Source: Haliotis cracherodii
Lineage: Eukaryota
NCBI RefSeq assembly: GCF_022045235.1
Contig: NW_027266280.1
Coordinates: 5,890,001 to 5,954,000 of the forward strand
Direction of reading: 5' to 3'
Length of the DNA stretch: 64,000 bases
Part shown: piece after piece, positions 2,721-59,449 of the stretch
Layout of the letters: each line of letters begins with the position of its first letter
Numbering within the stretch: position 1 is the first letter of the stretch
Made by a program: the position numbers and the translations under genes
Notes under the pieces: model-generated
Databases searched by the model: none
What the model was told of the DNA's origin: nothing
What the model saw: the letters and a program-made list of their open reading frames with translations, nothing else

Positions 2721-2743
2721 GAGTCCCATCATGCACTGCGCAG

Positions 2744-3762: not shown

Positions 3763-3854
3763 CTGCCATCGAAAGTCAGCATATGAGGATCACACACAGC
3801 ATGGCATGCCTTCCCAACGTTGATATTTGTATAGCCGTCCTTTGTCACCTCCAC
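3763..3854 (-). CDS. Gene A exon beginning a von Willebrand factor D domain (KACHAVCDPHMLTFDGR)
   Basis: TTTACCAG acceptor (phase 0), GTAAAG donor and the C-x4-DPH-x2-TFDG VWD start motif. The gene must continue to the left. Confidence 0.88.
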
Positions 3855-8226: not shown

Positions 8227-8565
8227 CGAAACTATCCCAACTTTATAATCCGAAAAGAACGGCATCTCGTTGGATATAGTTGTCAGCTTTAATTTTGTTA
8301 AGCCATTAAATTCGCCATTATCCACAATTATTTCTCCAAGGACAGTAATATTATATTCCACGTTGGCATATTGCAGGGGCACATTGCAGTCTGTCTGTAC
8401 AAATGCTTCTGGCTTACATTCTGTGTTGTCTTCGGATTTTGGAGCCGTTAGTTCCAGCCTGACTCTACATTCGTTAAACAATGTGCCACATTTGATTGGA
8501 ACTGTTGAAGTTACAGACAGAGATTTTGTTTGACCTTGTTTTACAGATATGGTCGGATTCACTAT
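8227..8565 (-). CDS. Gene A VWDE-like exon (IVNPTISVKQG...STVPIKC...VGIVS)
   Basis: TTTCAG acceptor, GTGAGT donor, 339 nt, phase 0-0, STVPI.C motif. Confidence 0.82.
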
Positions 8566-11105: not shown

Positions 11106-11362
11106 ATCAAAACCAAACTTGGTGAACCCTGAACCTTTAAGATCATCTTCAGTCAACCGAGAACTGTTCACAAAGTTGTCAGTCCATGGGGCAACACTTT
11201 TGATGGAAACTGAAATGTCGTTGACAAACCAGTATGTTTGATACTGTAAAGTACTGATGCCCAGCCTGTCAAAGTTGCAGAGGAAAAATACAAAACCGCT
11301 ATACGGAGTCTCCCCTGTCTGTATCTCCACACTACAGTTGTCAATGGTGTGAGTTGATGGTC
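11106..11362 (-). CDS. Gene A VWDE-like exon (GPSTHTIDNC...FLCNFD...YQTYWFVND...FGFD)
   Basis: TTTTACAG acceptor (phase 1) and GTAAGT donor (phase 0); open frame with the F.C.F...Y..YWF.N pattern of invertebrate VWDE-like proteins. Confidence 0.8.
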
Positions 11363-21852: not shown

Positions 21853-22750
21853 CATGCCACGCCTTTCAAATGTGCAACGTGAACGTATCATACGGGAACG
21901 TCCGTAGCTGAAGTCCCAAGGACGATGGGTTGTAGTCGACGGACTGTTTATGATTTACAGACGCGTTTACAGCAAACGGGTACCACCGCTGATCGCCATC
22001 GGCCAGGTCGACCACGTATGACGTCACATGCAGAGGATCATCAGATTGTCTTACGTCACCTCCGTAACCGATTTATGACGGCTATATCAACCAGAAATGA
22101 ACTGTGCAGGGGTAGACTGAGTGCGCAAACTGTTCTAAACGGTCTGAGAACTACTCACCTTCAAGCACGACGGCCATACTGCGGGCCGATTCTGACTCAA
22201 TTACGCAGACGTCAACGCTGCTGCTTACCGCGACCAGGTACTGGCACCAGAACTTCTGCCCTTTTTGGCAGCACATGGACCCGGTTTGATCTTCCAACAC
22301 GACAATGCCAGACCCCACAAAGCAATTTTGACAAGGAATTTCCTTCAGAATGCGGTAGTCAACGTCATGGACTGGCCGTCAAGGTCTCCCGACCTCAATC
22401 CCATCGAACACGTCTGGGATTATCTTGGCAGAAGTCTGCGCACTCTCCAGAACCAACCACAGCATTTGTAAGATCTTGGCACCAATTTGCAGCAACAATG
22501 GCGTCGTCTTCCCAATCATGTGTTCACAAGCATCACAAGGTCCATGCGGAGGCGTTGTGTGGCAGTTGTCAACGCACATGGTGGCCATACACGCTACTGA
22601 ACTTGTGTGCTATCAGATTCTCGTGCTTGGGACTTAAGATCCTTCTTTGGACATGAATGATTAAAAATTACCTTCTCTGATAAATTTGTCCGTTGTATAT
22701 CATATATGGGATTACTTTTAAAAATGTGAAGTTTTTAAATTGACTCAGTA
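21853..22750 (+). mobile_element. Tc1 relic, second family, internally deleted
   Basis: MPRLS start, HTH region (GTTADRHRPGRPR), FQHDNARPH...WPSRSPDLNPIEHVW and GGHTRY. Confidence 0.85.
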
Positions 22751-24191
22751 TATATGATGAACAAGGGGGAAATACACGCAGTTTTGCATGAGAAACGTTA
22801 AACGAATCGATACGACTTCGTTGTGCTCAAACTGAATGATGTAAACAGTGAGCAGTGTTTTTGTAATGCTTTCCGTAACCTATGTTTACATTTCTTTTCA
22901 CAATTTATTATTTTGTGCATTTCACAAACAAATAACTTTTCTTTCCTTTATTAAGTATATGCTCTGATTCATTCAATAACGGTCAAATAGCCAAGTCCCC
23001 TCCACTGATTAACCCACCTGAACCAGACATAAAAGAGTCTGCCTCATCTGTTTCATGTTCCGATCAATGCATAAAGATTTAGACAGACAAAACCACTCTC
23101 TACAAATCTGAATGAGAAGAGGGATGACTTCAACCTTCAAATAGTCAACTTTCCAATGTCGAGCAATATTAGAGCAGGTACAGCGTTTAGTATCTCCATT
23201 TCAGAAATGTTGAGGTATATTCGAGCATGACCTTTCTACGAATATTTCAAATAGCGTCATGCGACATGAGTAAGTGAGTGAGTGAGTGAGTATGGCTTTA
23301 CGCTGCATTTAGCAATATTCCAGCAATATCACGGCGTGACGAGCGAACGCTTTAACCACTAGGCTACCCGACCGCCCCAATGCCACATGAAGTTGAATGA
23401 TAGACATGTGGAGGACATGTCCAACGTTGACGCATAGGTGGCTAAAGTTATGTCTGATGCTATTTCCTATTCTGACTTGTACCATATGTTACTGTGTTTT
23501 TCAGGTGAACGATTGACTTATCTTTGCATTTGTTTCTGACGGGTGCCATCAGTGGTGCAGGATACGCTCACATTTTCGCGAACACATGGTAACATCACTA
23601 TTTGATTAATGATTCATGGGCATATTCTTATGATATAATCGGAGTTGTACAAAGGATTCTTCATTCAGTAGATATTTCTTATGATTATGGAAATGTTTAG
23701 TCGTATTTACTATGATAATTAACAGAGTTTTATCGTATTATATTGAGATACAAGTTTTCAAGTTTTGCAGCTACGCACATTGAAGAATTACAATAAATAG
23801 AGTTTCACAAGCACCTACGTATGTTTCGCACATTCACAATGAGCGAAGGTAGTTCTGTATCCAGAAGTATTAGGCATAAAAACAGATGTGCATACTTGAG
23901 TGTTTGTTTCAATTATACTACAATTATTAGGCTGTACTCCTTTGCCATAAATGCAGCACTATCAAAAGGCGATGCACAGACAATATGAGATGTGTAAATC
24001 GATAAATCATTGCTGCTTCAGCAGATTGTATTCACTTTATGAACATCCTGGCCAGACAAGTGCTAGTATGTCAGTGTTTATAATAAGTAACTGTTCATCC
24101 CATGTGCACAGCTCTAGCAATAACGGAAAACGGTCACACAACCCATTATTCGTAAACGTGGGCCTTACAATGAATAATAAGGCATATGTAC

Positions 24192-27100
24192 CTGAATTTG
24201 TTGTCAAAGTTGGGCTCATCGATGTTTCAATGCCTGTGCCAGTGCTCCAGCCTGTTCCTGTGCCAGTGTTCGAGCCTGTGCTTGTGCCAGTGTTCGAGGC
24301 TGTGCTTGTGCCAGTGTTCCAGCCCGTGCTTCTGCCAGTGGTCGAGCCTGTGCTTGAGCTAGTGGTCGAGCCTGTGCTTGTGCCAGTGTTCGAGCCTGTG
24401 CTTGTGCCAGTGTTCCAGCCTCTGCTTGAGCTAGTGCTCGAGCCTGTGCTTGTACCAGTGTTCGAGCCTGTGCTTGTGCCAGTGTTTGATCCTGTGCTTG
24501 TGCCAGTGTTTGATCCTGTGCTTGTGCCAGTGTTCGAGTCTGTGCTTGTGCCATTGTTTGATCCTGTGCTTGTACCAGTGCTCGAGTCTGTGCTTGTGCC
24601 ATAGTTTGATCCTGTGCTTGTGCCAGTGTTCGAGTCTGTGCTTGTGCCAGTGTTTGATCCTGTGCTTGTACCAGTGCTCGAGTCTGTGCTTGTGCCATTG
24701 TTTGATCCTGTGCTTGCGCCAGTGTTCGAGCCTGTGCTTGTGCCAGTGTTTGATCCCGTGCTTGTGCCAGTGTTCCAGCCTGTGCTTGTGCCAGTGTTCG
24801 AGCCTGTGCTTGTGCCAATGTTTGATTCTCTGCTTGTGCCAGTGTTTGAGTCTGTGCTTGTACCAGTGTTCCAGCTCGTGCTTGTGCCAATGTTTGATTC
24901 TCTGCTTGTGCCAGTGTTTGATTCTGTGCTTGTGCCAGTGTTTGATTCTGTGCTTGTGCCAGTGTTCGAGCTTGTGCTTGTGCCAGTGTTCCAGCTTGTG
25001 CTTGTGCCAGTGGTCGAGCCTGTGCTTGTGCTAGTGTTCGAGCCTGTGCTTGTGCCAGTGTTTGATTCTGTGCTTGTGCCATTGTTTGATTCTGTGCGTG
25101 TGCCAGTGTTCGAGCTTGTGCTTGTGCCAGTGTTTGATTCTGTGCTTGTGCCAGTGTTCCAGCTTGTGCTTGTGCCAGTGTTCCAGCCTGTGCTTGTGCC
25201 AGTGTTCCAGCCTGTGCTTGTGCTAGTGTTCGAGCCTGTGCTTGTGCCAGTGTTTGATTCTGTGCTTGTGCCAGTGTTCCAGCCTCTGCTTGAGCTAATG
25301 CTTGAGTCTTTGCTTGTACCAGTGTTCGAGCCTGTGCTTGTGCCAGTGTTTGATCCTGTGCTTGTGCCAGTGTTCGAGTCTGTGCTTGTGCCAGTGTTTG
25401 ATCCTGTGCTTGTGCCAGTGTTCGAGCCTGTGCTTGTGCCAGTGTTCGAGCCTGTGCTTGTGCCAATGTTTGATTCTGTGCTTGTGCCAGTGTTTGAGTC
25501 TGTGCTTGTACCAGTGCTCCAGCTCGTGCTTGTGCCAATGTTTGATTCTCTGCTTGTGCCAGTGTTTGATTCTGTGCTTGTGCCAGTGTTTGATTCTGTG
25601 CTTGTGCCAGCGTTTGATTCTGTGCTTGTGCCAGTGTTTGATTCTGTGCTTGTGCCAGTGTTCGAGCTTGTGCTTGTGCCAGTGTTCCGGCTTGTGCTTG
25701 TGCCAGTGGTCAAAGCTGTGCTTGTGCTAGTGTTCGAGCCTGTGCTTGTGCCAGTATTTGATTCTGTGCTTGTGCCATTGTTTGATTCTGTGCTTGTGCC
25801 AGTGTTCGAGCTTGTGCTTGTGCCAGTGTTTGATTCTGTGCTTGCGCCAGTGTTCCAGCCTGTGCTTGTGCCAGTGTTTGATCCTGTGCTTGTGCCAGTG
25901 TTCGAGTCTGTGCTTGTGCCAGTGTTTGATCCTGTGCTTGTGCCAGTGTTCGAGCCTGTGCTTGTGCCAGTGTTCGAGCTTGTGCTTGTGCCAGTGTTTG
26001 ATTCTGTGCTTGTCCCAGTGTTCCAGCTTGTGCTTGTGCCAGTGTTCCAGCTTGTGCTTGTGCCAGTGGTCGAGCCTGTGCTTGTGCTAGTGTTCGAGCC
26101 TGTGCTTGTGCCAGTGTTTGATTCTGTGCTTGTGCCATTGTTTGATTCTGTGCTTGTGCCAGTGTTCGAGCTTGTGCTTGTGCCAGTGTTTGATTGTGTG
26201 CTTGCGCCAGTGTTTGATTCTGTGCTTGTGCCAGTGTTCCAGCTTGTGCTTGTGCCAGTGTTCCAGCTTGTGCTTGTGCCAGTGGTCGAGCCTGTGCTTG
26301 TGCTAGTCTTCGAGCCTGTGCTTGTGCCAGTGTTTGATTCTGTGCTTGTGCCAGTGTTCCAGCCTCTGCTTGAGCTAATGCTCGAGTCTGTGCTTGTACC
26401 AGTGTTCGAGCCTGTGCTTGTGCCAGTGTTTGATCTTGTGCTTGTGCCAGTGTTTGATCCTGTGCTTGTGCCAGTGTTCGAGTCTGTGCTTGTGCCAGTG
26501 TTTGATCCTGTGCTTGTACCAGTGCTCGAGTCTGTGCTTGTGCCATTGTTTGATCCTGTGCTTGTGCCAGTGTTCGAGTCTGTGCTTGTGCCAGTGTTTG
26601 ATCCTCTGCTTGTGCCAGTGTTCGAGCCTGTGCTTGTGCCATTGTTTGATCCCGTGCTTGTGCCAGTGTTCGAGCCTGTGCTTGTGCCAGTGTTCGAGCC
26701 TGTGCTTGTGCCAATGTTTGATTCTGTGCTTGTGCCATTGTTTGAGTCTGTGCTTGTACCAGTGCTCCAGCTCGTGCTTGTGCCAATGTTTGATTCTCTG
26801 CTTGTGCCAGTGTTTGATTCTGTGCTTGTGCCAGTGTTTGATTCTGTGCTTGTGCCAGCGTTTGATTCTGTGCTTGTGCCAGTGTTTGATTCTGTGCTTG
26901 TGCCAGTGTTCGAGCTTGTGCTTGTGCCAGTGTTCCAGCTTGTGCTTGTGCCAGTGGTCAAACCTGTGCTTGTGCTAGTGTTCGAGCCTGTGCTTGTGCC
27001 AGTATTTGATTCTGTACTTGTGCCATTGTTTGATTCTGTGCTTGTGCCAGTGTTCGAGCTTGTGCTTGTGCCAGTGTTTGATTCTGTGCTTGTGCCAGTG

Positions 27101-28376
27101 TTTGAGCCTGTGCTTGTGCCAGTGTTCAAGCCTGTGCTTGACCCAGTGGTGTAGCCTGTGCTTGTGCCAGTGTTCGAGCCTGTGCTTGTTCCAGTGTTCC
27201 AGCCTGTGCTTGTGCCAGTGGTCGAGCCTTTGCTTGTGCTAGTGTTCGAGCCTGTGCTTGTGCCAGTGTTTGATTCTGTGCTTGTGCCAGTGTTCGAGCT
27301 TGTGCTTGTGCCAGTGTTTGATTCTGTGCTTGCGCCAGTGTTTGATGCCGTGCTTGTGCCAGTGTTCAAGCTTGTGCTTGTGCCAGTGTTCGAGCCTGTG
27401 CTTGTTCCAGTGTTCGAGCCTGTGCTTGTGCCAGTGTTTGATTCTGTGCTTGTGCCAGTGTTTGATTCAGTGCTTGTGCCAGTGTTCGAGCTTGTGCTTG
27501 TGCCAGTGTTTGAGCCTGTGCTTGTGCCAGTGTTTGATTCTGTGCTTGTGCCAGTGTTTGATTCTGTGCTTGTGCCAGTGTTCGAGCCTGTGCTTGTGCC
27601 AGTGTTCCAGCTTGTGCTTGTGCCAGTGGTCGAGCCTGTGCTTGTGCTAGTGTTCGAGACTGTGCTTGTGCCAGTGTTTGATTTTATGCTTGTGCCATTG
27701 TTTGATTCTGTGCTTGTGCCAGTTTTCGAGCTTGTGCTTTTGCCAGTGTTTAAGCCTGTGCTTGTGCCAGTGTTTGATTCTGTGCTTGTGCCCATGTTTG
27801 ATTCTGTGCTTGTGCCAGTGTTCGAGCCTGTGCTTGTGCCAGTGTTTGAGCCTGTGCTTGTGCCATTGTTTGATTCTGTGCTTGTGCCAGTGTTCCAGCC
27901 TGTGCTTGTGCCAGTGTTTGATTCAGTGCTTGTGCCAGTGTTCGAGCTTGTGCTTGTGCCAGTGTTTGATTCTGTGCTTCTGCCCGTGTTTGATTCTGTG
28001 CTTGTGCCAGTGTTCCAGCCTGTGCTTGTGCCAGTGTTCGAGCTTGTGCTTGTGCCAGTGTTCCAGCTTGTGCTTGTGCCAGTGTTCCAGTCTGTGCTTG
28101 TGCCAGTGTTCCAGCCTGTGCTTGTGCCAGTGGTCGAGCCTGTGCTTGTGTCAGTGTTAGAGCCTGTGCTTGTGCCAGTGTTTGAGCCTGTGCTTGTGCC
28201 AGTGATCCAGCCTGTGCTTGTGCCAGTTTTCGAGCCTGTGCTTGTGCGAGTGTTTGGTCCTGTGCTTGTGCCAGTGTTCCAGCCTGTGCTTGCACCAGTG
28301 CTCGAACCCGTGCTTGTGCCAGTGTTCGAGCCTGTGCTTGTGCCAGTTTTTGATCCTGTTCCTGTGGTCAACGCTA
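24192..28376 (-). CDS. Gene A Thr/Gly/Ser repeat exon, long copy (1395 aa, about 172 octapeptides NTGTST[G/E/S/D][S/W])
   Basis: GCAG acceptor and GTACAT donor, 4185 nt, phase 1-1. This frame has no stop, whereas the other frames are interrupted. Confidence 0.78.
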
Positions 28377-31300
28377 CTGCCGATAACAAAATATTAGTCG
28401 GATTTTTAATCCCAAAGTAAGGATTCAAATTCTTAAGTGTGCATTTGTTACATTATCTCATGACACTAGTTAATTATTTGGAGTGTGTATAATTCATTTT
28501 GATTACTCCATTCATTCTCGTAAGAGTGGTCATTTTGGTGTTACAGCTACTGTGACATGCATTACAGAAGCAACGCACAACTTGTTGATTTGAAAATGTT
28601 CCAACTAATGGTAATTCAAGCTTATAGTTGTTCGAGTTTTATGAAACATCTTTCCAGGTCAGTTGCGTTCGATGCACTATGGTTAGTATGCAAATTATCA
28701 GAGTGAAATGGGGGACACGGGTGGCCCAGTCGTCTAAGGCGCTGCAATTCACTGTGCAGAGTTGCGTTCCTTGTGCACGCCAAAAACCTATGATTGTGGG
28801 TTCGCATCCCGCATCCGATTATGTTTCTAGGTTTGTCAGCACCATACCCGTGCTCGTGGGTTTCACCGAAGTGGTTAACATCAGAGACCTGCATCACTTC
28901 GGGCTTTCCTCCCACATTTAGCTGACACGCCGTGATATAACTGGAATAATGTCAAAAACGGCGTTAAACACAACTCACTCACTCAGAGTAAAATGTACGA
29001 ATAGTGGTTTAAAACATTAATACTCATGATCAATTTGCACAACAGGAGCCCTAACTCATGCTCCTGGCCCAAATTCATTAAACAAACATGTGAAAATTGA
29101 GAGACAAAAGGATAACAATTAGAAGCTTTAACCGTTTCCGCATAATATCGTTATTATCTTGAATGAGTTAGTAATTGCAAAATAATGGACATACGTCAGT
29201 TTAAAGACAAGCAAGAGAAAATCCGACCACCCATGCATCCAGTTCAGTCCATCAAAAGAAACAATAAACAATTGAAGCAAGTTATTCAAAGCATATGTTG
29301 TGTGCCTGCAAATTCGCCTCTTTCAAGTGTGTCAATCAAGCCGTTAATGGTTACACTGTTTACACCGACTTTCAGTTTGACACATGCCACTATATGGCCT
29401 TGACTAAGACTGGAAATGGGCTAAAGACCATGGATCATATGTGATACCGATAACTGATACAGAAATAATGTTCAAACCGCAAGCTTTCTATAGTTTCATG
29501 AATTTCATTTTTATTCGTAGAGTAGATCTGCTTCATTATGAAATCACAGAAAGGTAACGCCATGATTACAAGAAGGGGTCGTTTATAATATCACTGAAGG
29601 AAGACACGAACTTGCATTGGATTGTATTGGCATTAAATTTGATAAAAGCTTTCTTCCCTGAAGAAAGATTATTTTAATATTCAGCTCACGCTCAATAGTG
29701 TTAATGGAAGTTGTTAGAAATGAAAATGTAAAATATGAACAAGGATGAAAAAGTAAGATGTTTACCCAAACCATCTAAAATAGAAAAACAACAATATTAT
29801 ATGATATATATAATATAAGGGGTCCTCATCTCCCACATAATCACTGTATAATGTTATACAATTGATCTTTTTTGCACGGAGATGCAGCATTTGTACACTG
29901 ATATTGATGTTATGAAAGTACATTCAAATTGAAACAAGCCTATAATATTTTCCCGAATTCCATTTCTATTCATACGCATTGTGACATCAAAATTAGGTAA
30001 TTACAATGCGGCTGCATTTAGATTATCACCTAGGTAAGATCCCATGAAGATCCGCGTAAAGTTTGGTCTTCGGGAACTTATCTTAAGAGGTGCTATGCTT
30101 GGCGCAAGAGGTGACTATCGGGGTCGGGTGGTCAGGTTCGTTGACTTAGTCAATGCATGTCATCGTATCCCACTTGCGTAGATAAATGCACTGGATTGTC
30201 TGGTCCAGACTCGATTATTTACAGACCGCCGTCATACTACTAGATTATTTCTAGGTAACACATGAACCTGCATTGAATTAACTGTAATAAAGGATTTCTT
30301 TCTTGAAGATAAATTCTTTTTATCTTCATTTTACTCACAAATGTTAATGGACAAGGGGGAAATGCACACATTATTGCACATGATTGGCGCATGCATGTGA
30401 CTGGCTTATATATGATGGACGAGGGGGAAATGCACGCAGTTTTGCATGAGAAACGTTAAACGAATCGATACGATTGCGTTGTGCTCAAACTGAGTGATGT
30501 AAACAGTGAGCAGTGTTTTTGTAATGCTTTCCTTAACCTATGTTTACATTTCTTTTTACAATTTATTATTTTGTGCATTTCACAAACAAATAACTTTTCT
30601 TTCCTTTATTAAGTATATGCTCTGATTCATTCAATAACGGTCAAATAGCCAAGTCCCCTCCACTGATTAACCCACCTGAACCAGACATAAAAGAGTCCGC
30701 CTCATCTGTTTCATGTTCCGATCAATGCATAAAGATTTAGATAGACAAAACCACTCTCTACAAATCTGAATGAGAAGAGGGATGACTTCAACCTTCAAAT
30801 AGTCAACTTTCCAATGTCGAGCAATATTAGAGCAGGTACAGCGTTGAGTATCTCCATTTTAGACATTTTCAGGTATATTCGAGCATGATCTTTCTACGAA
30901 TATTTCAAATAGCGTCATGCGACATGAGTGGGTGAGTGAGTATGGCTTTACGCCGCTTTTAGCAATATTCCGGCAATATCACGGCGTGACGAGCGAACGC
31001 TTTAACCACTAGGCTACCCGACCGCCCCAATGCCACATGAAGTTGAATGATAGACATGTGGAAGACATGTCCAATGTTGACGCATAGGTGGCTAAAGTTA
31101 TATCTGATGCTATTCCCTATTCTGACTTGTACCATATGTTACTGTGTTTTTCAGGTGAACGATTGACTTATCTTTGCATGTGTTTCTGACGAGTGCCATC
31201 AGTGGTGCAGGATACGCTCACATCTTCGCGAACACATGGTATCATCACTATTTGATTAGTGATTCATAGGCATATTCTTATGATATAATCGGAGTTGTAC

Positions 31301-31841
31301 AAAGGACTCTTCATTCAGTAGATATTTCTTATGATTATGCAAATGTTTAGTCGTATTTACTATGATAATTAACAGAGTTTTATCGTATTATATTGAGATA
31401 CAAGTTTTCAAGTTTTGCTGCTATGCACATTGAAGAATTACAATAAATAGAGTTTCACAAGCACCTACGTATGTTTGGCACATTCACAATGAGCGAAGGT
31501 AGTTCTGTATCCAGAAGTATTAGGCATAAAAACAGATGTGCATACTTGAGTGTTTGTTTCAATTATACTACAATTATTAGGCTGTACTCCTATGCCATAA
31601 ATGCAGCACTATCAAAAGGCGATGCACAGACAATATGAGATGTGTAAATCGATAAATCATTACTGCTCCAGCAGATTGTGTTCACATTATGAAAATCCTG
31701 GCCAGAAAAGTGCTAGTATGTCAGTGTTTATAATAAGTAACTGTTCATCCTATGTGCACAGCTCTAGCAATAACGGAAAACAGTCACACAACCCATTATT
31801 CGTAAACGTGGGCCTTACAATGAATAATAATGCATATGTAC

Positions 31842-32978
31842 CTGAAGTTGTGGTCCAAGTTGGGCTCATCGATGTTTCAATGCCTGTGCCAGTGCTCCAG
31901 CCTGTTCCTGTGCCAGAGTTCGAGCCTGTGCCTGTGCCAGTGTTCGAGCCTGTGCTTGTGTCAGTGTTTGATCCTGTGCTTGTGCCAGTGTTCAAGCCTG
32001 TGCTTGTACCAGTGCTCCAGCCCGTGCTTGTGCCAGTGTTCGAGCCTGTGCTTGTGCCAGTGTTCCAGCCTGGGTTTGAGCCAGTGTTCGAGCCTGTGCT
32101 TGTGCCAGTGTTCGAGCCTGTGCTTGTGCCAGTGTTCCAGCCTGTGCTTGAGCCAGTGGTCGAGCCTGTGCTTGTGCCAGTGTTTGAGCCTGTGCTTGAG
32201 CCAGTGTTCGAGCCTGTGCTTGTCCCAGTGTTCGAGCCTGTGCTTGTGCCAGTGTTTGATCCTGTGCTTGTGCCAGTGATCCAGCCTGTGCTTGTGCCAG
32301 TTTTCGAGCCTGTGCTTGTGCGAGTGTTTGGTCCTGTGCTTGTGCCAGTGTTAGAGCCTGTGCTTGCACCAGTGCTCGAGCCCGTGCTTGTGCCAGTGTT
32401 CGAGCCTGTGCTTGTGCCAGTGTTTGATCCTGTGCTTGTGCCAGTGATCCAGCCTGTGCTTGTGCCAGTTTTCGAGCCTGTGCTTGTGCGAGTGTTTGAT
32501 CCTGTGCTTGTGCCAGTGATCCAGCCTGTGCTTGTGCCAGTTTTCGAGCCTGTGCTTGTGCGAGTGTTTGGTCCTGTGCTTGTGCCAGTGTTCGAGCCTG
32601 TGCTTGTACCAGTGCTCGAGCCTGTGCTTGTACCAGTGCTCGAGCCTGTTCTTGTGCCAGTGTTCCAGCCTGTGCTTGATCCAGTGTTCGAGCCTGTGCC
32701 AGTGCCAGTGTTCCAGCCTGTGCTTGTGTCAGTGTTCCAGCCTGTGCTTGTGTCAGTGTTCCAGCCTGTGCTTGAGCCAGTGTTCGAGCCTGTGCTTGTA
32801 CCAGTGTTTGATCCTGTGCTTGATCCAGTGTTCGAGCCTGTGCTTGTGCCAGTGTTCCAGCCTGTGCTTGTGTCAGTGTTCCAGCCTGTGCTTGTGCCAG
32901 TGTTCCAGCCTGTGCTTGTACCAGTGCTCGAGCCTGTGCTTGTGCCAGTTTTTGATCCTGTTCCTGTGGTCAACTCTA
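31842..32978 (-). CDS. Gene A Thr/Gly/Ser repeat exon, medium copy (379 aa, about 45 octapeptides)
   Basis: Same splice sites as the other copies, 1137 nt, phase 1-1, no stops. Confidence 0.75.
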
Positions 32979-34948
32979 CTGCAAATAACAAAATATTAGT
33001 CGGATTTTTAATCCCAAAGTAAGGATTCAAATTCTTAAGTGTGCATTTGTTACATTATCTCATGACACTAGTTAATTATTTGGAGTGTGTATAATTCATT
33101 TTGATTACTCCATTCATTCTCGTAAGAGTGGTCATTTTGGTGTTACAGCTACTGTGACATGCATTACAGCAACAACGTACAACTTGTTGATTTGAAAATG
33201 TTCCAACTAATGGTAATTCAAGCTTATAGTTGTTCGAGTCTTATGAAACATCTTTCCAGGTCAGTTGCGTTCGATGCACTATGGTTAGTATGCAAATTAT
33301 CAGAGTGAAATGGGGGCACGGGTGGCCCAGTCGTCTAAGGCGCTGCAATGCACTGTGCAGAGTTGCGTTCCTTGTGCACGCCAAAAACCTATGATTGTGG
33401 GTTCGCATCCCGCATCCGATTATGTTTCTAGGTTTGTCAGCACCATACCCGTGCTCGTGGGTTTCACCGAAGTGGTTAACATCAGAGACCTGCATCACTT
33501 CGGGCTTTCCTCCCACAATTAGCTGACACGCCGTGACATAACTGGAATAATGTCAAAAACGGCGTTAAACACAACTCACTCACTCAGAGTAAAATGTACG
33601 AATAGTGGTTTAAAACATTAATACTCATGATCAATTTGCACAACAGGAGCCCTAACTCATGCTCCTGACCCAAACTCATTAAACAAACATGTGAAAATTG
33701 AGAGACAAAAGGATAACAATTAGAAGCTTTAACCGTTTCCGCATAATATCGTTATTATCTTGAATGAGTTAGTAATTGCAAAGTATTGGACATACCTCAC
33801 TTTTAAGACAAGCAAGAGAAAATCTGACCACCCATGCATCCAGTTCAGTCCATCAAAAGAAACAATAAACAATTGAAGCAAGTTATTCTAAGCATACGTT
33901 GTGTGCCTGCAAATTCGCCTCTTTCAAGTGTGTCAATCAAGCCGTTAATGGTTACACTGTTTACACCGACTTTCAGTTTGACACATGCCACTATATGGCC
34001 TTGACTAAGACTGGAAATGGGCTAAAGACCATGGATCATATGTGATACCGATAACTGATACAGAAATAATGTTAAAACCGCAAGCTTTCTATCGTTTCAT
34101 GAATTTCATTTTTATTCGTAGAGTAGATCCGCGTCATTATGACATCACAGAAAGGTAACGCCATGATTACAAGAAGGGGTCGTTTATAATATCACCGAAG
34201 GAAGAGTACGAACTTGCATTGGATTATATTGGCATTACATTTGATAAAAGCTTTCTTCCCTGAAGATAGATTATTTTAATATTCAGCTCACGCTCAATAG
34301 TGTTAATGGAAGTTGTTAGAAATGAAAATGTAAAATATGAACAAGGATGAAATAGTAAGATGTTTACCCAAACCATCTAAAATAGAAAAACAACAATGTT
34401 ATATGATATATATAATATAAGGAGTCCTCATCTCCCACATAATCACTGTATAATGTTATACAATTGATCTTTTTTGCACGGAGATGCAGCATTTGTACAC
34501 TGATATTGATGTTATGAAAGTACATTCAAATTGAAACAAGCCTATAATATTTTCCCGAATTCCATTTCTATTCATACGCATTGTGACATCAAAATTAGGT
34601 AATTACAATGCGGCTGCATTTAGATTATCACCTAGGTAAGATCCCATGAAGATCCGCGTAAAGTTTGGTCTTCGGGAACTTATCTTAAGAGGTGCTATGC
34701 TTGGCGCAAGAGGTGACTATCGGGGTCGGGTGGTCAGGTTCGTTGACTTAGTCAATGCATGTCATCGTATCCCACTTGCGTAGATAAATGCACTGGATTG
34801 TCTGGTCCAGACTCGATTATTTACAGACCGCCGTCATACTACTAGATTATTTCTAGGTAACACATGAACCTGCATTGAATTAACTGTAATAAAGGATTTC
34901 TTTCTTGAAGATAAATTCTTTTTATCTTCATTTTACTCACAAATGTTA

Positions 34949-35120
34949 ATGGACAAGGGGGAAATGCACACATTATTGCACATGATTGGCGCATGCATGT
35001 GACTGGCTTATATATGATGGACGAGGGGGAAAAGCACGCATTTTTGCATGTGATTGGCGCATGCATATGACTGGCTTATATATGATGGACAAGGGGGAAA
35101 TGCACGCAGTTTTGCATGAG
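34949..35120. repeat. 68-bp minisatellite at the triplication junction (also at 30347, 21573 and 22757)
   Basis: ATGGACAAGGGGGAAATGCAC... recurs at 34949, 35017 and 35085. Confidence 0.9.
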
Positions 35121-36529
35121 AAACGTTAAACGAATCGATACGACTTCGTTGTGCTCAAACTGAGCGATGTAAACAGTGAGCAGTGTTTTTGTAATGCTTT
35201 CCTTAACCTATGTTTACATTTCTTTTCACAATTTATTATTTTGTGCATTTCACAAACAAATAACTTTTCTTTCCTTTATTAAGTATATGCTCTGATTCAT
35301 TCAATAACGGTCAAATAGCCAAGTCCCCTCCACTGATTAACCCACCTGAACCAGACATAAAAGAGTCCGCCTCATCTGTTTCATGTTCCGATCAATGCAT
35401 AAAGATTTAGATAGACAAAACCACTCTCTACAAATCTGAATGAGAAGAGGGATGACTTCAACCTTCAAATAGTCAACTTTCCAATGTCGAGCAATATTAG
35501 AGCAGGTACAGCGTTTAGTATCTCCATTTCAGAAATGTTGAGGTATATTCGAGCATGACCTTTCTACGAATATTTCAAATAGCGTCATGTGACATGAGTA
35601 AGTGAGTGAGTGAGTGAGTGAGTATGGCTTTACGCTGCATTTAGCAATATTCCGGCAATATCCCGGCGTGACGAGCGAACGCTTTAACCACTAGGCTACC
35701 CGACCGCCCCAATGCCACATGAAGTTGAATGATAGACATGTGGAGGACATTTCCAACGTTGACGCATAGGTGACTAAAGTTATGTCTGATGCTATTCCCT
35801 ATTCTGACTTGTACCATATGTTACTGTGTTTTTCAGGTGAACGATTGACTTATCTTTGCATGTGTTTCTGACGGGTGCCATTTGTGGTGCATTTTCGCGA
35901 ACACATGGTATCATCACTATTTGATTAATGATTCATGGGCATATTCTTATGATATAATCAGAGTTGTTGAAAGGACTCTTCATTCAGTAGATATTTCTTA
36001 TGATTATGGAAATGTTTAGTCGTATTTACTATGATAATTAACAGGGTTTTATCGTATTATATTGAGATACAAGTTTTCAAGAGGTTTGTATGAAGAATTG
36101 CTTTGCAGCTACGCACATTGAAGAATGACTATAAATAGTGTTTCACAAGCACCTACGTATGTTTCGCACATTCACAATGAGCGAAGGCAGTTCTGTATCC
36201 AGAAGTATTCGGCATAAAAACAGATGTGCATACTTGAGTGTTTGTTTCAATTATACTACAAATATTAGGCTGTACTCCTTTGCCATAAGTGCAGCACTAT
36301 CATAAGGCGATGCACAGACAATATGAGATGTGTAAATCGATAAATCATTACTGCTCCAGCAGATTGTGTTCACTTTATGAAAATCCTGGCCAGAAAAGTG
36401 CTAGTATGTCAGTGTTTATAATAAGTAACTGTTCATCCTATGTGCACAGCTCTAGCAATAACGGAAAACAGTCACACAATCCATTATTCGTAAACGTGGG
36501 CCTTACAATGAATAATAATGCATATGTAC

Positions 36530-36802
36530 CTGAAGTTGTGGTCCAAGTTGGGCTCATCGATGTTTCAATGCCTGTGCCAGTGCTCCAGCCTGTACTTGTG
36601 CCTGTGTTCGAGCCTGTGCTTGTGCCAGTGTTTAATCCTTTTCCTGTGCCAGTTCTCGAGCCTGTTCCTGTGCCAGTGCTCGAGCCTGTGCTTGTGTCAG
36701 TGTTCCAGCCTGTTCTTGTGCCAGTGCTCGAGACTGTTCCTGTGCCAGTGGTCGAGCCTGTGCTTGTGCCAGTGTTTGACCCTGTGCCTGTGGTCAACGC
36801 TA
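36530..36802 (-). CDS. Gene A Thr/Gly/Ser repeat exon, short copy (91 aa, about 9 octapeptides)
   Basis: TTATTTGCAG acceptor, CAG|GTACAT donor, 273 nt, phase 1-1, open frame. Confidence 0.75.
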
Positions 36803-39639
36803 CTGCAAATAACAAAATATTAGTCGGATTTTTAATCCCAAAGTAAGGATTCAATGTATTAAGGGTGCATTTGTTATATTATCTCATGGCACTAGTTAAT
36901 ATGTTGGAGTATAATTCATTTTGATTACTCCATTCATTCTCGTAAGAGTTGTCATGTTTGGTGTTACAGCTACTGTGACATGCATTACAGCAGCAACGCA
37001 CAACTTGTTGATTTGAAAATGTTCCAACTAATGGTAATTCAAGCTTATAGTTGTTCGAGTCTTATGAAACATCTTTCCAGGTCAGTTGCGTTCGATGCAC
37101 TATGGTTGGCATGCAAATTATCAGAGTGTAATGAGGGCACGGGTGGCCCAGTCGCTTCAGGCGCCGCGATTCGATGTGCAGAGTTGAGTCCCTTGGGCAC
37201 GCCAAAAACCTATGATTGTGGGTTCGCATCCGGGTTCGTTCCGATTATGTTTTTAGGTTTGTCAGCACCATACCCGTGCTCGTGGGTTTCACCGAAGTGG
37301 TTAACATCAGAGACCTGCATCACTTCGGGCTTTCCTCCCACATTTAGCTGACACGCCGTGATATGACTGGAATAATGTCAAAAACGGCGTTAAACACAAC
37401 TCACTCACTCACTCAGAGTGAAATGTACGAATAGTGGTTTAAAACATTAATACTCATGATCAATTTGCACAACAGGAGCCCTAACTCATGCTCCTGACCC
37501 AAACTCATTAAACAAACATGTGAAAATTGAGAGACAAAAGGATAACAATTAGAAGCTTTAACCGTTTCCGCATAATATCGTTATTATCTTGAATGAGTTA
37601 GTAATTGCAAAGTATTGGACATACCTCACTTTTAAGACAAGCAAGAGAAAATCTGACCACCCATGCATCCAGTTCAGTCCATCAAAAGAAACAATAAACA
37701 ATTGAAGCAAGTTATTCTAAGCATACGTTGTGTGCCTGCAAATTCGCCTCTTTCAAGTGTGTCAATCAAGCCGTTAATGGTTACACTGTTTACAATGACT
37801 TTCAGTTTGACATATGCCACTATATGGCCTTTACTAAGACTGGAAATGGGCTAAAGACCATGGATCATATGTGATACCGATAACTGATACAGAAATAATG
37901 TTCAAACCGCAAGCTTTCTATCGTTTCCTGAATTTCATTTATATTCGTAGAGTAGATCCGCTTCATTATGACATCACAGAAAGGTAACGCCATGATTACA
38001 AGAAGGGGTCGTTTATAATATCACTGAGGCAATATACGAACTTGTATTGAATTGTATTGGCATTAAAGTTGATAAAGGTTGTCTTAAATTATAAGTTTTA
38101 AATGTAAAGTTTACACGAAATACGGCTTTTCCATTGGACGAGAGGTCGATCACATGACCGCGAAACTGAAGTTTATACGTGTACGAACGACACACTCTGT
38201 TGTATATACGTTTTTCACGAGACTGTATTCTTGAAATGACTTACACACTGACGGTTTACTCGCACTTTCGTGGGGAAACCCCTGGGAATTCCCGAGCACG
38301 AATAAAAACAGGAGCATCGTTTCTCATCATTTAGGCCCTTTAATCCTGAACTTAGCGTTTTACCATACATTGGGAGAAGTTTCGAGGTGACGCAAGAGGT
38401 GACTATCGGGGTCGGGTGGTCAGGTTTGTTGATTTGCAATGCAAGTCAATGCATGTCATCGTATCCCACTTGCGTAGATCAATGCACTGGGATATTACTA
38501 GGTAGCACACAAACCTGCATTGAATTAAATGTAATAAAGGATTTCTTTCTTGAAGATAATTTATTTTTATCTTCATTTTACTCACAAATGTTAATGGAAT
38601 TTGATTGGAATGCAAATGTAGAGAACGATCAAGCATGATAAGTAAAATATTTCTTACCCGTAAAAGCTGGAAAAGAAAGTAGAAACGGGAAATGACAGCA
38701 ATAACATAAGGACATTACAGAATCCCTGCACAGTGTTAAACATTTTAGCTTTTTGCAGGATCAAGAAGCAGCATACGTACACTGATGATGTTATGGAATC
38801 AAACAACATTTCATTTCTGTTCATACAATAGAAATCACAATAAGTTAATACCGAACAGTAAGAGCTTGAACAGTATTTGCATGAAATGATATATGATACC
38901 TTTCTTGAAAATATATTCCTTTTGATCTTGATCTTTATCAATTTTAAATTAATGAAACGAGAATGCAAATGTAAAATATGAACAAGTAAGCATATATTAC
39001 CCCCCAAAAAAATGAAAATAGGAAAACTGATTTACAATGACACAAATGATAAATAATGTTTTTATTATTTACATACTCGCTTTATAGTTTTGTTCATACA
39101 ATTTATTATTTGTCATTGGGAAGAGATTAGATTAGTACATTTACACTTAAATGATTTTGACATATCTGCTGCGACTGAAACATAAATATGGTCATAGGTA
39201 TGTTTCCCCTACATGGTTGCATGGAGAGACTTTATCAATGCTATTTTAGCATGGAATGGCACTCTACTGACAGCCGTATAGTTTCACCAGGTTAGCTGTG
39301 TGTTGTAAACTCCGTTGTATTGCTTCATGAATCTTTGCATAAATATCAACCAGGTGGTACAGTGGCTCTTTGTTAGAATAGATAAGGACAGTTTGAATAT
39401 CTGTAATCCATGTGACTTATCAGATGGGAGGGCTTACCCACATTAAAAAGAAAGTGTAGTTTGACGTTAGCAACATGTCTAGCAAGACACCATTGTACAG
39501 CAATCAACCACATGAACTGAAACTTTTCACTGCTTTATGATCTTTTAATTTCATACTCTTTACATCGTCATATAAGTATGGAGGCACGTTGTGTCCAGGA
39601 TATTACCTTCAGAAGTGCATACATTATGTCCCATACATA

Positions 39640-58042: not shown

Positions 58043-58207
58043 CAAAGCAGTATCTCTCCGAGCAACCGTCCATCTTCACAAGGTAGTACACATAGAAGTG
58101 TCCACAGTTCTTCACCTGGATTATCACACGCTTCATGCAAGAGTCGTCGTAGCCGCTGACGCACACGGATCTATGCACAACGCCGTCACGGACGGATGGG
58201 TGTGTCC
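58043..58207 (-). CDS. Gene B exon 3: D8C domain, C-half
   Basis: GTHPSVRDGVVHRSVC...C...IQVKNCGHFYVYYL...CSERYCFG; 165 nt, GTAAGT donor. Confidence 0.92.
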
Positions 58208-59276: not shown

Positions 59277-59449
59277 CTGATGGAAATGAATACATCTCAA
59301 TATCGTTCTGTTACATGGGCATTGCATGCATGGCTAGGGTCGGGTTGTGGTTAACGTTTCTTTATATCTGTCGGATTTAAGCGCAAACCACCTCCATTAG
59401 TTTGGCTGCATTGCCAAAAGTCGAGTACCGTTTCCTATTATTGTGTATT

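What the first reader, a model, noticed from the sequence alone, without database searches (positions are those of the whole stretch)
24192..36802. Giant TxTxT octapeptide array: possible beta-solenoid ice- or mineral-templating domain rather than an ordinary mucin
Seen: about 225 near-perfect 8-residue units N-T-G-T-S-T-x-x with very little proline, Thr alternating with small Gly/Ser, strict 24-nt register, and no stop in 4185 nt despite many TGG/TCA/TCG codons one step from a stop. Known: mucin PTS domains are Pro-rich and irregular, whereas TxT(xT) rows with inward small residues build the beta-solenoids of beetle antifreeze proteins and 8/16-residue bacterial ice nucleators. Inference: a secreted VWD-containing polymer with a very long regular Thr surface for ice, CaCO3 or adhesion. 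A heavily O-glycosylated rod remains the simpler alternative.
Basis: partly seen in the sequence, partly recalled or inferred. Interest (0 to 1): 0.75.

Follow-up and report, generated by a model that had tools for sequence, protein, structure and literature searches.

The report
Giant threonine-rich linker in abalone VWDE-like gene
Three duplicated exons of an abalone gene related to VWDE encode about 1,865 residues of a proline-poor eight-residue threonine repeat, most likely a sugar-coated spacer; the software model of a folded antifreeze-like rod is untrustworthy for such repeats.

Summary
Three minus-strand exons (36802-36530, 32978-31842, 28376-24192) have canonical AG/GT sites. All are phase 1-1 and multiples of three. 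In one stop-free frame they encode 232 eight-residue units, consensus N-T-G-T-S-T-[G/E/S/D]-[S/W] (T 35%, S 25%, G 19%, N 10%, P 0.4%). The array occurs only at this locus in the 1.18-Gb genome.

The exons sit in frame between a two-exon D8C domain (59.3-58.0 kb) and collinear pre-VWD, VWD and EGF exons that run at least 30 kb past the window start. This is a VWDE-type gene of an abalone. The family is expanded in this genome, and two named relatives carry unrelated Thr/Ser/Pro repeats of their own.

RNA-type contigs from three related organisms cover the exons but not the introns, and one contig joins a cassette tail to a cassette head. The one such run laid for the window's own organism shows nothing.

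AlphaFold2 gives a confident beta-solenoid (pLDDT 88.8; best match an antifreeze beta-helix, Z 16.6). Three papers describe this AF2 behaviour for Thr-rich or perfect repeats, mucin 22 among them.

Substitutions look neutral apart from the avoidance of stops. An O-glycosylated spacer is the best reading (about 0.58). A folded Thr-faced rod remains possible (about 0.15). Nothing here supports ice or mineral binding.

The parts
24192..28376 (-). Cassette exon A: 4185 nt, phase 1-1, 174 eight-residue units. Position 7 is G 79, E 45, S 27, D 15; position 8 is S 136, W 28.
   Evidence: The acceptor ...tatcggcag| and donor CAG|gtacat were read. Coordinates, unit table and 0 stops come. TRF gives 172.3 copies.
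31842..32978 (-). Cassette exon B: 1137 nt, phase 1-1, 47 units (position 7 is G in 45 of 47; position 8 is W in 14 of 47).
   Evidence: RNA-type contigs of X10, X17 and X20 cover its head (bin 32900-33099, depth 85, 13.5 and 350) but barely the next intron bin (0, 0.11 and 0).
36530..36802 (-). Cassette exon C: 273 nt, phase 1-1, 11 more degenerate units.
   Evidence: RNA-type contigs of X10, X17 and X20 cover bins 36500-36899 (depth 72-747) with 0 in bins 36300-36499 and 36900-37099. One X20 contig joins 36530 to 32979, skipping 3550 nt.
22749..38076 (-). Tandem triplication of the whole exon-plus-flanking-intron unit that produced cassettes A, B and C.
   Evidence: Self-BLAST with the arrays masked: intron flanks are 96.3-98.2% identical between A and B and 94.0-94.9% between C and A or B.
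59070..59307 (-). D8C/D10C domain, first exon. The donor AAT G|gtatg is phase 1. The acceptor is tentative, and the signal-peptide exon upstream was not found.
   Evidence: Pfam D8C_UMOD E 5.3e-4, profile positions 8-33. DNA read. It aligns to residues 46-106 of the relative P0025 (weak).
58043..58207 (-). D8C/D10C domain, second exon: 165 nt, phase 1-1. Its donor TTT G|gtaag fits the acceptor of C, B, A or the next domain exon.
   Evidence: Pfam D8C_UMOD E 7.9e-9, 36 bits against a cut-off of 27, profile positions 30-87. Splice sites.
11106..11362 (-). First pre-VWD exon ('X'): 257 nt, acceptor phase 1, donor phase 0. It follows cassette A in frame.
   Evidence: tblastn to P0026 residues 4-73 (E 4e-7) and P0025 residues 2052-2147 (E 3e-5). 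Splice sites.
8227..8565 (-). Second pre-VWD exon ('Y'): 339 nt, phase 0-0.
   Evidence: tblastn to P0026 residues 88-220 (E 1e-9). A phmmer search of 1.84 billion representatives gave 3 hits, 2 of them VWD+EGF proteins. Ends read.
3763..3854 (-). First exon of the VWD domain (...CHAVCDPHMLTFDG): 92 nt, phase 0 to 2. The rest of the VWD and the EGF exons lie 14-30 kb beyond the window start, in loci L001 and L004.
   Evidence: tblastn to the three VWD starts of P0025 (E 6e-5 to 9e-4). Downstream exon L001:3243-3491(-) scores Pfam VWD 24.8 bits against a cut-off of 22.9. Splice sites.

Best explanation
The array is a lineage-specific, very recently expanded mucin-like linker of a VWDE-family gene in an abalone (Haliotis) genome. 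One symmetric (phase 1-1) exon encoding an N-T-G-T-S-T-x-x repeat lies in the intron between the N-terminal D8C/D10C domain and the pre-VWD/VWD/EGF body. That exon and its flanking intron were triplicated, and the 24-nt unit expanded by unequal exchange to 11, 47 and 174 copies. If all three exons are spliced in, they add about 1,865 residues that are 60% Ser+Thr.

Inferred, not shown: in the secretory pathway these residues are densely O-glycosylated and form a stiff, hydrated, protease-resistant spacer. At about 0.25 nm per residue it would be several hundred nm long. It would hold the D8C domain far from the VWD-EGF part in a mucus or cell-surface coat. Because every junction is phase 1, any subset of the cassettes can be included without breaking the frame, so length could vary by splicing or by copy number.

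Shown: the repeat, the open frame, the splice sites and phases, the domain neighbours, the uniqueness of the array in the genome, and exon-only coverage plus one exon-exon junction in RNA-type runs of related organisms.

Inferred: that one transcript carries all parts, secretion, glycosylation, and the spacer role.
For: Repeat, frame and splice sites.

In-frame fit. D8C exon 2 (58207-58043, donor phase 1) is followed by C, B and A (all phase 1-1) and then exon X (11362-11106, acceptor phase 1).

Domains. D8C scores 36 bits against a cut-off of 27. VWD scores 24.8 against 22.9 on L001. Nine tblastn blocks on the minus strand are collinear with P0025 and P0026, from the pre-VWD to the EGF region.

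Family. P0025 and P0026 carry VWD plus Teneurin-like EGF. [quoted passage not shown] An extended-data legend of PMC8930769 lists VWDE among the proteins with the D10C (extended D8C) domain (passages read).

Relatives carry their own, unrelated Thr/Ser/Pro tandem repeats: a 27-residue unit in P0025 and PTTSLPSPGQ in P0026. Fast-changing mucin-like stretches are thus seen in two named relatives.

The array is found only at this locus. All 100 listed of 117 pattern matches lie inside the window; the backwards-read control gave 0.

Transcription in relatives. X10, X17 and X20 cover the exon bins (depth 13-747), with 0 in the unique intron bins next to exon C and at most 0.11 in the one next to exon B's head. 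One X20 contig joins 36530 to 32979, with a GT at the minus-strand donor side and 9 extra in-frame letters.

The frame is kept open: 0 stops against 3.3-3.6 expected, P about 0.03.

Replacement changes are otherwise unconstrained: 28 synonymous against 85 non-synonymous, where random expectation is 25.5% synonymous. That fits a constraint on composition only.

Mean hydropathy is 0.385, below the disorder boundary of 0.420.
Against: Proline is 0.4%, against the Pro-rich make-up usual for mucin domains. Asn (10%) and Trp (2.5%) are unusual for them.

AlphaFold2 folds 20 units with high confidence. The opposite-strand frame of the same DNA, run the same way, gets pLDDT 54.4. So the prediction is specific to this sequence and is not given to just any repeat.

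No RNA support in the window's own organism. X22 has depth 0 on the exon bins, and X22-X24 hold 0.00 of the sampled words.

No protein from this locus appears in the protein collections, so automated annotation may not call this gene.

The 5' signal-peptide exon and the 3' end were not found. Secretion is therefore inferred from the domain types alone. O-glycosylation could not be tested with these tools.
Confidence: 0.58

Rival explanations
1. The array folds. Two octapeptides make one 16-residue coil of a flat two-sheet beta-solenoid, with T-x-T-x-T ladders on both faces and G-S/W-N corners. All three exons together would give a rigid rod of about 56 nm. Its regular hydroxyl/methyl lattice would organise water, bind a crystal face (ice or carbonate), or self-associate into fibres for adhesion.
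For: AF2 on 20 units with a 10-row alignment of array segments gave pLDDT 88.8 and pTM 0.80, with beta strand throughout. VIA-align's best match is the Ca-dependent antifreeze beta-helix 3p4g, at Z 16.6 and rmsd 1.7 A over all 160 residues. The next rows, other beta-solenoids, score Z 10-14.6. The same protocol on the opposite-strand frame gave pLDDT 54.4 and pTM 0.25. Variation is concentrated at positions 7 and 8, the predicted corners, while N1, G3, S5 and the three Thr are 84-97% constant in exon A. Tomita et al. argue that some Thr-rich hydrophilic repeats may truly fold: 23 of 50 were stable in molecular dynamics (PMC11936462, sections read).
Against: The five AF2 models disagree (88.8, 85.8, 70.9, 56.0, 38.7). 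Foldseek found no match at E <= 0.001 (best 0.17). [quoted passage not shown] In Tomita et al., 207 of 1600 artificial Thr-rich repeats got the same treatment. There is no two-unit periodicity: lag-2 identity is 0.848 against 0.847 at lag 1. The sequence has no Cys and almost no hydrophobic residues to fill a core. Thr codons show no purifying selection (6 synonymous, 27 non-synonymous). Pfam finds nothing, ice-nucleation and insect antifreeze families included. The closest named relatives are from temperate abalones, where ice is not an obvious selective agent (habitat from general knowledge). Dense O-glycosylation in the Golgi would probably compete with such a fold.
Confidence: 0.15
2. The array is a neutral, runaway minisatellite in a gene that is silent or decaying in this species. 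The open frame is a short-lived by-product of very recent amplification of a stop-free unit.
For: The ratio of synonymous to non-synonymous changes equals random expectation. Synonymous sites in the TGTST core are as invariant as the others, which points to homogenisation rather than selection. Introns of the three cassettes are 94-98% identical, so the expansion is young. RNA-type runs of the same organism hold none of it. No protein from the locus is in the collections. An 18-kb intron inside the VWD carries a large GC-rich insertion, noted earlier as Maverick-like.
Against: All three cassettes keep AG/GT sites and lengths that are multiples of three. There are 0 stops against 3.3-3.6 expected (P about 0.03). 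The CpG codon TCG has gone to synonymous TCA in 78 units, but to TTG in only 5. All flanking domain exons examined are open and collinear. Related organisms have exon-only coverage and a spliced junction. Only one run of the same organism (X22) was laid, out of three listed, and its tissue is unknown.
Confidence: 0.2
3. The coding strand is the plus strand. The ATG-started ORFs 23951-24604, 31601-33022 and 36289-36846 would encode a hydrophobic P-V-L-V-P-V-F-E repeat protein.
For: That frame has 0, 0 and 2 stops across the three arrays, and each copy has an upstream ATG.
Against: Two stops break it in the largest array. The minus-strand splice sites, the phase compatibility with the D8C and pre-VWD exons, and the GT end of the skipped segment in the X20 junction all fit the minus strand. 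AF2 gives only a low-confidence helix (pLDDT 54.4). An open antisense frame is expected from a repeat whose sense frame lacks the complements of stop codons.
Confidence: 0.02

Closest known systems
[quoted passage not shown]
   Same: An N-terminal D8C/D10C domain, a pre-VWD region, one VWD module and EGF-like repeats appear in the same order. Thr/Ser-rich tandem repeats occur somewhere in the relatives' chains.
   Different: The linker between D8C and the pre-VWD region is a few residues long in P0025. Here it is up to about 1,865 residues, in three cassette exons. The repeat unit is unrelated to the relatives' repeats and lacks proline. Identity in the domains is only 27-52%. One transcript spanning all parts has not been shown.
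Mucin (PTS) domains, e.g. the 8-residue TTSTTSAP repeat of MUC5AC (unit recalled from memory)
   Same: A very long tandem array of a short unit, 60% Ser+Thr, encoded in large symmetric exons of a gene for an extracellular-type protein, evolving quickly by changes in unit number.
   Different: Proline is 0.4%, Gly 19%, Asn 10% and Trp 2.5%. The flanking architecture is VWDE-like, not D1-D2-D'D3 ... CTCK. Glycosylation is unproven.
Beta-solenoid ice binders: MpAFP region IV (PDB 3p4g), bacterial ice-nucleation proteins, insect TxT antifreeze proteins
   Same: T-x-T rows. The AF2 model superposes on 3p4g at Z 16.6 and rmsd 1.7 A. Like ice nucleators, it is a very long array whose period is 8 or a multiple of 8.
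   Different: 11% identity to 3p4g. No Pfam or PDB-sequence match. No Cys ladder, no hydrophobic inward residues and no 16-residue periodicity. The fold rests on a predictor known to over-call it.
Human mucin 22 as treated in PMC11795689
   Same: A natural near-perfect Ser/Thr-rich repeat that AF2 models as a confident beta-solenoid.
   Different: For mucin 22, ESMFold and RoseTTAFold-All-Atom predict disorder (section 3.2.8, read). Those predictors could not be run here.

Membership tests
VWDE-like proteins | N-terminal D8C/D10C domain | tested here: met
   Pfam PF23283 scores 36 bits (cut-off 27) on 58020-58247(-), and E 5.3e-4 on 59053-59310(-). The two exons join in phase 1 to give ...GWLN-G-THPSVRDG....
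VWDE-like proteins | A VWD domain downstream on the same strand | tested here: met
   Pfam PF00094 scores 24.8 bits (cut-off 22.9) on L001:3243-3491(-), profile positions 110-155. Four collinear tblastn blocks cover the VWD of P0025 and P0026. The six-frame genome scan with PF00094 missed it.
VWDE-like proteins | EGF-like repeats after the VWD | tested here: inconclusive
   Pfam gives only sub-threshold EGF_TEN (E 0.013) and EGF_Tenascin (E 0.098) on L004 ORFs. tblastn to the EGF region of P0025 and P0026 gives E 1e-7.
VWDE-like proteins | All parts on one transcript | not testable with these tools
   The phases of all junctions are compatible. The only junction seen in reads is cassette tail to cassette head, in a related organism.
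Gel-forming mucins / VWF-like polymers | Several VWD-C8-TIL assemblies at the N-terminus and a C-terminal cystine knot | tested here: not met
   Only one VWD was found. It lies downstream of the array, and no C8, TIL or CTCK appeared in the ORFs scanned. The 3' end of the gene was not found, so CTCK is not strictly excluded.
Mucin (PTS) domain | A long tandem repeat with a high Ser+Thr share | tested here: met
   232 units; S+T is 59.8%.
Mucin (PTS) domain | Proline-rich | tested here: not met
   P is 0.4%.
Mucin (PTS) domain | Dense O-GalNAc glycosylation | not testable with these tools
   No glycosylation predictor or glycoproteome was available.
Bacterial ice-nucleation proteins | A 16-residue repeat (with 8- and 48-residue hierarchy) matching the Pfam ice-nucleation repeat | tested here: not met
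   Pfam found 0 families at E <= 10 on two array pieces, and only a chance hit on the third. Unit identity at lag 2 equals that at lag 1.
Insect TxT beta-solenoid antifreeze proteins | T-x-T rows on coils braced by a Cys/disulfide ladder | tested here: not met
   T-x-T-x-T is present in 173 of 232 units, but there is no Cys in 1856 residues and no Pfam hit. The disulfide-ladder criterion is recalled from memory.
Ca-dependent beta-helix of MpAFP / RTX type | Same fold | tested here: inconclusive
   The AF2 model matches 3p4g_A at Z 16.6, rmsd 1.7 A, 11% identity. The model itself is of doubtful reliability. Ca-binding motifs were not examined.

The most novel reading that the evidence does not exclude
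An animal has evolved, within a very short time, a roughly 1,865-residue all-hydrophilic beta-solenoid with no cysteines and no hydrophobic core. Two N-T-G-T-S-T-x-x units make each turn, with threonine ladders on both faces. It would be the first natural example of the Thr-only 'sandwich' beta-helix so far seen only in silico. As a splice-tunable rigid rod in a VWDE-like protein, it would order water or crystal faces, or zip into fibres in abalone mucus or shell matrix.
Probability: 0.12. Interest if true: 0.85.

Novelty: new variant of a known kind. Interest (0 to 1): 0.42.

Why it matters
On the ordinary reading, this is one more case of a mollusc building a huge mucin-like spacer by exon duplication and minisatellite growth, here inside a VWDE-type gene. 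It is useful for annotation, because automated pipelines seem to miss the locus. It also shows how fast such linkers arise.

Its wider value is as a test case. It is a natural, proline-free, Thr/Gly/Ser/Asn octapeptide array that AlphaFold2 calls a confident antifreeze-like beta-helix. Expressing 10-20 units and measuring their fold would show whether purely hydrophilic Thr-rich repeats can fold in nature. If they cannot, the array becomes a clean natural counter-example for calibrating structure predictors on repeat proteins.

Tried and rejected
A Pfam VWD scan of the whole genome in six frames gave 36 matches, none in the window. The VWD here is split into short exons and was found only through homologues.

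The candidate first exon 38743-38657(-) has an ATG, a hydrophobic stretch and a GTAAGA donor. I rejected it because it ends in phase 2, which does not fit exon C, and its bins have depth 0 in all four runs.

The repeat finder on 20-42 kb returned only the 24-nt families and was no use for the segmental duplication. A masked self-BLAST did that job.

Two word-indexed homologue searches, with the ORFs over exons A and B, gave only weak low-complexity hits. The best were E 1.7e-13 at 34% identity over 11% of the query, and E 4.6e-14. They cover targets of 805-2560 and 234-745 residues only, so longer or shorter proteins were not searched.

ESM Atlas gave no lead (best score 0.81, 'hypothetical'). 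A PDB sequence search gave nothing below E 0.19. Foldseek against the PDB gave nothing at E <= 0.001.

tblastn of P0025 and P0026 on a further 30 kb downstream (L005-L007) found no more exons, and no Thr/Ser/Pro-rich ORF was seen there. The 3' end, and any membrane anchor, therefore remain unknown. The signal-peptide exon upstream of 59307 was not found either.

Literature searches turned up no paper describing this repeat or abalone VWDE-like genes. That is five keyword searches of the open library and not proof of absence.

The limpet adhesive-mucus paper (PMC7333891, passages read) shows VWD/EGF proteins in gastropod pedal mucus. I use it only as context.

Full report
WHAT IS THERE

Tandem Repeats Finder finds a 24-nt period without indels at three places: 24231-28366 (172.3 copies), 31881-32968 (45.3) and 36569-36792 (9.3). 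On the minus strand each array lies in an exon with a canonical acceptor (...ttgttat[c/t][g/t]gcag|TAG...) and donor (...TTCAG|gtacatatgc).

The exons are:
- C: 36802-36530, 273 nt
- B: 32978-31842, 1137 nt
- A: 28376-24192, 4185 nt

All three lengths are multiples of three, and all begin and end in phase 1. In that frame there are no stops in any of them. The other five frames of exon A hold 10, 17, 14, 80 and 2 stops.

Cut into octapeptides, the exons give 11 + 47 + 174 = 232 units, and 173 of them have Thr at positions 2, 4 and 6. The consensus is N-T-G-T-S-T-[G/E/S/D]-[S/W], from the DNA unit AACACTGGCACAAGCACAGGCTCG. Composition is T 35.1, S 24.7, G 18.8, N 10.4, E 2.6, W 2.5 and P 0.4%. 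'Near-perfect' is generous: units are about 85% identical to one another at every lag from 1 to 89.

IS IT MORE THAN CHANCE, AND IS THE FRAME MAINTAINED?

A two-unit pattern allowing up to 3 mismatches has 117 matches in the 1.18-Gb assembly. All 100 listed matches fall inside this window (17 more are not listed), and the pattern read backwards gave none.

Variation among units shows no excess at third codon positions. A minimum spanning tree over the 92 distinct DNA variants of 220 core units needs at least 113 substitutions. Of those, 28 are synonymous and 85 are not, which is the random expectation (25.5% synonymous). For the three Thr codons the split is 6 to 27. So I detect no purifying selection on the residues.

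Two signals point the other way. Random substitutions would have made 3.3-3.6 stop codons and none is seen (Poisson P about 0.03). The CpG codon TCG has decayed to synonymous TCA in 78 units but to TTG (Leu) in only 5. Because variant units are copied, these counts are not independent events, and I treat both signals as modest.

HOW THE THREE EXONS AROSE

With the arrays masked, self-BLAST shows that the whole unit of exon plus flanking introns (22749-38076) is a tandem triplication. Flanks of A and B are 96.3-98.2% identical. Flanks of C are 94.0-94.9% identical to the other two. The expansion is therefore young. Exon A has since acquired E, D and S at position 7, while B and C keep G there.

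THE GENE AROUND IT

Upstream on the same strand, two exons encode a D8C (uromodulin-like) domain. The piece 58020-58247 scores 36 bits against Pfam's cut-off of 27, and 59053-59310 scores E 5.3e-4. D8C exon 2 is 58207-58043 (165 nt, phase 1-1), and its donor is TTT G|gtaag.

Downstream, an ORF at 8203-8676 was searched against 1.84 billion representative proteins and gave three hits. Two of them carry VWD and Teneurin-like EGF domains: P0025 (3003 aa) and P0026 (994 aa). Their sources name them as uncharacterised proteins of two Haliotis species. [quoted passage not shown]

tblastn of these two proteins onto the window plus 30 kb fetched from the same contig gives collinear minus-strand blocks:
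- pre-VWD 'X': 11300-10986
- pre-VWD 'Y': 8604-8221
- VWD start: 3854-3723
- VWD middle and end: 14.1-16.8 kb beyond the window start
- a post-VWD block: 23.9 kb beyond
- EGF-region blocks: 25.4 and 27.6 kb beyond

Pfam confirms the VWD end on L001:3243-3491(-), at 24.8 bits against a cut-off of 22.9.

Reading the splice sites gives X = 11362-11106 (phase 1 to 0), Y = 8565-8227 (phase 0-0) and VWD exon 1 = 3854-3763 (phase 0 to 2). Every junction from D8C through C, B and A to the VWD is in frame. The frame also holds if any or all of the cassettes are skipped. In P0025 the D8C-like region is followed almost directly by the X region. The array therefore occupies what is a short linker in a paralogue.

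An extended-data legend of PMC8930769 lists VWDE, together with uromodulin, GP2 and LZP, as a protein with this domain, there re-defined as D10C (passages read). The gene is thus VWDE-like and not a gel-forming mucin.

P0026 matches another contig of this genome at 71-97% identity. Weaker matches to its VWD and neighbouring regions lie at many other places on contigs C17 and C3, so the family is expanded here. The 5' signal-peptide exon and the 3' end were not found. No protein from this locus appeared in any protein search.

TRANSCRIPTION

The one run search, using exon A, found DNA runs of the window's organism holding 0.22-0.24 of the sampled words. Probable RNA runs of three related organisms held 0.05-0.09. 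Probable RNA runs of the same organism held 0.00.

I laid four probable RNA runs on 32900-38899. X10, X17 and X20 have contigs on the exon bins: 32900-33099 at depth 85, 13.5 and 350, and 36500-36899 at depth 72-747. They have depth 0 in the unique intron bins 36300-36499 and 36900-37099, and 0, 0.11 and 0 in 33100-33299. One X20 contig (depth 224, 52 letters on the shorter side) joins 36530 to 32979 and skips 3550 nt. The skipped part ends in the complement of GT on the donor side. Eight letters lie between the two sides, which together with the extra matched base makes nine additional in-frame bases relative to the junction predicted from the window.

X22, from the window's own organism, has depth 0 on the exons and on the unique introns. 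It is therefore not genomic DNA, and it shows no expression. These are contigs, and the 'RNA' label is the tool's guess. The exon-only pattern and the junction support that label. So the homologous cassettes are transcribed and spliced head to tail in relatives, while expression in this species is not shown. Only one of its three listed RNA-type runs was laid, and its tissue is unknown.

FOLD

AlphaFold2 on 20 units, with nine other in-register array segments as the alignment, gave mean pLDDT 88.8 and pTM 0.80, with strand from residue 13 to 159. The five models scored 88.8, 85.8, 70.9, 56.0 and 38.7.

Foldseek against the PDB found nothing at E <= 0.001. Its weak rows are beta-helices, adhesins and ice-binding proteins. 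The Foldseek-independent aligner ranked the Ca-dependent antifreeze beta-helix of Marinomonas (3p4g_A) first, at Z 16.6 and rmsd 1.7 A over all 160 residues with 11% identity. After it came curli CsgA, TibA, antigen 43, LpxD and many other beta-solenoids at Z 10-14.6.

As a control I ran the opposite-strand frame of the same arrays (P-V-L-V-P-V-F-E) through the same protocol. It gave pLDDT 54.4 and pTM 0.25, as a long helix. The confident solenoid is therefore specific to the Thr-rich frame.

Three papers show why this is weak evidence:
- Pratt et al. (PMC11795689; abstract and section 3.2.8 read) found that AF2, unlike other predictors, gives confident but implausible beta-solenoids for perfect repeats. 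They single out human mucin 22 as a likely natural victim.
- Tomita et al. (PMC11936462; results sections read) found that 207 of 1600 artificial hydrophilic Thr-rich repeats were confidently folded by AF2, mostly as beta-helices. Units of 8-10 residues gave a two-sheet 'sandwich', and 23 of the 50 best were stable in 100-ns simulations.
- A preprint on threonine ladders (10.1101/2025.03.18.644030; passages read) repeats the warning.

Independent indicators here do not favour a fold. There is no two-unit periodicity. There is no Cys and almost no hydrophobic residue. No selection is detectable on Thr. The Uversky hydropathy of 0.385 lies below the boundary of 0.420. Pfam returned nothing on two array pieces and only a chance hit (CFAP143, E 8.8) on the third. 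The PDB sequence search returned nothing below E 0.19.

On the other side, the strongly conserved Asn and Gly next to the variable positions 7 and 8 are what one would expect of solenoid corners. The absence of proline is unusual for a mucin.

MOST LIKELY MECHANISM

I commit to the glycosylated-spacer reading at about 0.58. A phase 1-1 exon encoding a Ser/Thr-rich linker between the D8C/D10C head and the VWD-EGF body was amplified at two levels, the 24-nt unit and the exon-intron cassette. In the secretory pathway the Thr/Ser clusters would be O-glycosylated into a stiff, hydrated rod. That rod would project the D8C domain, a glycan-presenting or binding 'decoy' module in uromodulin and GP2 according to PMC8930769, away from the cross-linking VWD/EGF part in an epithelial coat or mucus. 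VWD/EGF proteins are prominent in limpet pedal adhesive mucus (PMC7333891, passages read), which gives a plausible setting. I could not check tissue.

The shown steps are the sequence anatomy, the domain neighbours and splicing in relatives. The inferred steps are secretion, glycosylation, the spacer role and the tuning of length.

The rivals are a true Thr-faced beta-solenoid rod (0.15), a silent or decaying locus carrying a neutral minisatellite (0.20) and plus-strand coding (0.02). Ice binding has no support beyond the AF2 model, and the closest named relatives are temperate abalones (habitat from general knowledge). Carbonate templating is untested.

KNOWN OR NEW

The kind is known: a mucin-like tandem-repeat linker in a modular extracellular protein, grown by exon duplication. 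Other AI notes of this scan list several mucin-stalked genes in the same genome (I did not check them).

The variant is new in three ways. The unit is proline-free and made of Thr, Gly, Ser and Asn. It sits between D8C and VWD in a VWDE-type gene. It has no look-alike in the collections searched: searches cover targets of 234-745 and 805-2560 residues only, and searches also found nothing.

My searches confirm that anatomy, but splice-tuning itself remains untested.

Overall interest is moderate. On the likely reading it is ordinary, but it is a clean natural test of whether hydrophilic Thr repeats fold, and of AF2's behaviour on repeats.

Noticed in passing
window 1-2858 and about 10 kb further beyond the window start (L003): A GC-rich block with long non-abalone-like ORFs lies inside the 18-kb intron between VWD exon 1 (3763) and the next VWD exon (about 14.1 kb beyond the window start). 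I did not examine it beyond listing ORFs.
   Followed up: no
window 46673-46867 (+): A plus-strand open frame closely resembles the second D8C exon at 58043-58207(-), sharing ...VKNCGHFYVYYL.KMDGCSERYCFGK. Pfam D8C is only weak on it (E 0.029). It is probably an inverted partial duplicate or pseudo-exon inside the 21-kb intron between D8C and cassette C.
   Followed up: partly
G000: C17 3.46-3.69 Mb, 4.86-4.89 Mb, 7.76 Mb; C3 23.06-23.09 Mb and 38.1-38.9 Mb; C27 1.53-1.54 Mb: Many further matches to the VWD and neighbouring regions of P0026. VWDE-like genes form an expanded, partly clustered family in this genome. The C27 locus is 71-97% identical to P0026.
   Followed up: partly
window 33300-33700, 34700-34900, 35500-35900, 37100-37500, 38100-38500: Short stretches inside the cassette introns draw very high summed contig depth (up to about 3e5) in all four RNA-type runs. 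Loose ends there read like tRNA-derived SINE tails. The related peptide motif GAAIRCAELRP.GTPETYDCGF... recurs in many ORFs across the window.
   Followed up: no
window 5641-6810 and 15625-16769; 5717-6286 (-); 21925-22656 (+): An inverted pair of 1.18-kb repeats is 89% identical. Both carry Tc1/mariner-type transposase remnants. A 190-aa open transposase fragment lies at 5717-6286, and an HTH-bearing ORF lies at 21925-22656. All sit in the intron between cassette A and the VWD exon.
   Followed up: no
window 59380-59778 (-): A separate tandem repeat just upstream of D8C exon 1 is open in three minus-strand frames (for example ...KHVTKTCQTCHQYLPNMSP...). It is probably an intronic or promoter-region minisatellite. 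It is not the 5' exon I was looking for.
   Followed up: no
window 42292-42661 (-) and 43165-43678 (-): Open frames resemble retroelement pol fragments (for example ...WSSPIILVPNPDGSYRCC...) inside the D8C-to-cassette intron. Pfam gave no hit on the two pieces tested.
   Followed up: partly
window 12591-12720: A run of 130 N (assembly gap or masked) lies in the intron between cassette A and exon X. It was left untouched.
   Followed up: no
window 36530 / 32978 junction in run X20: The related organism's spliced contig carries 9 extra in-frame bases at the junction of cassette tail and head, compared with the window's predicted junction. Either its exon boundary differs by three codons or it uses another acceptor.
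   Followed up: no
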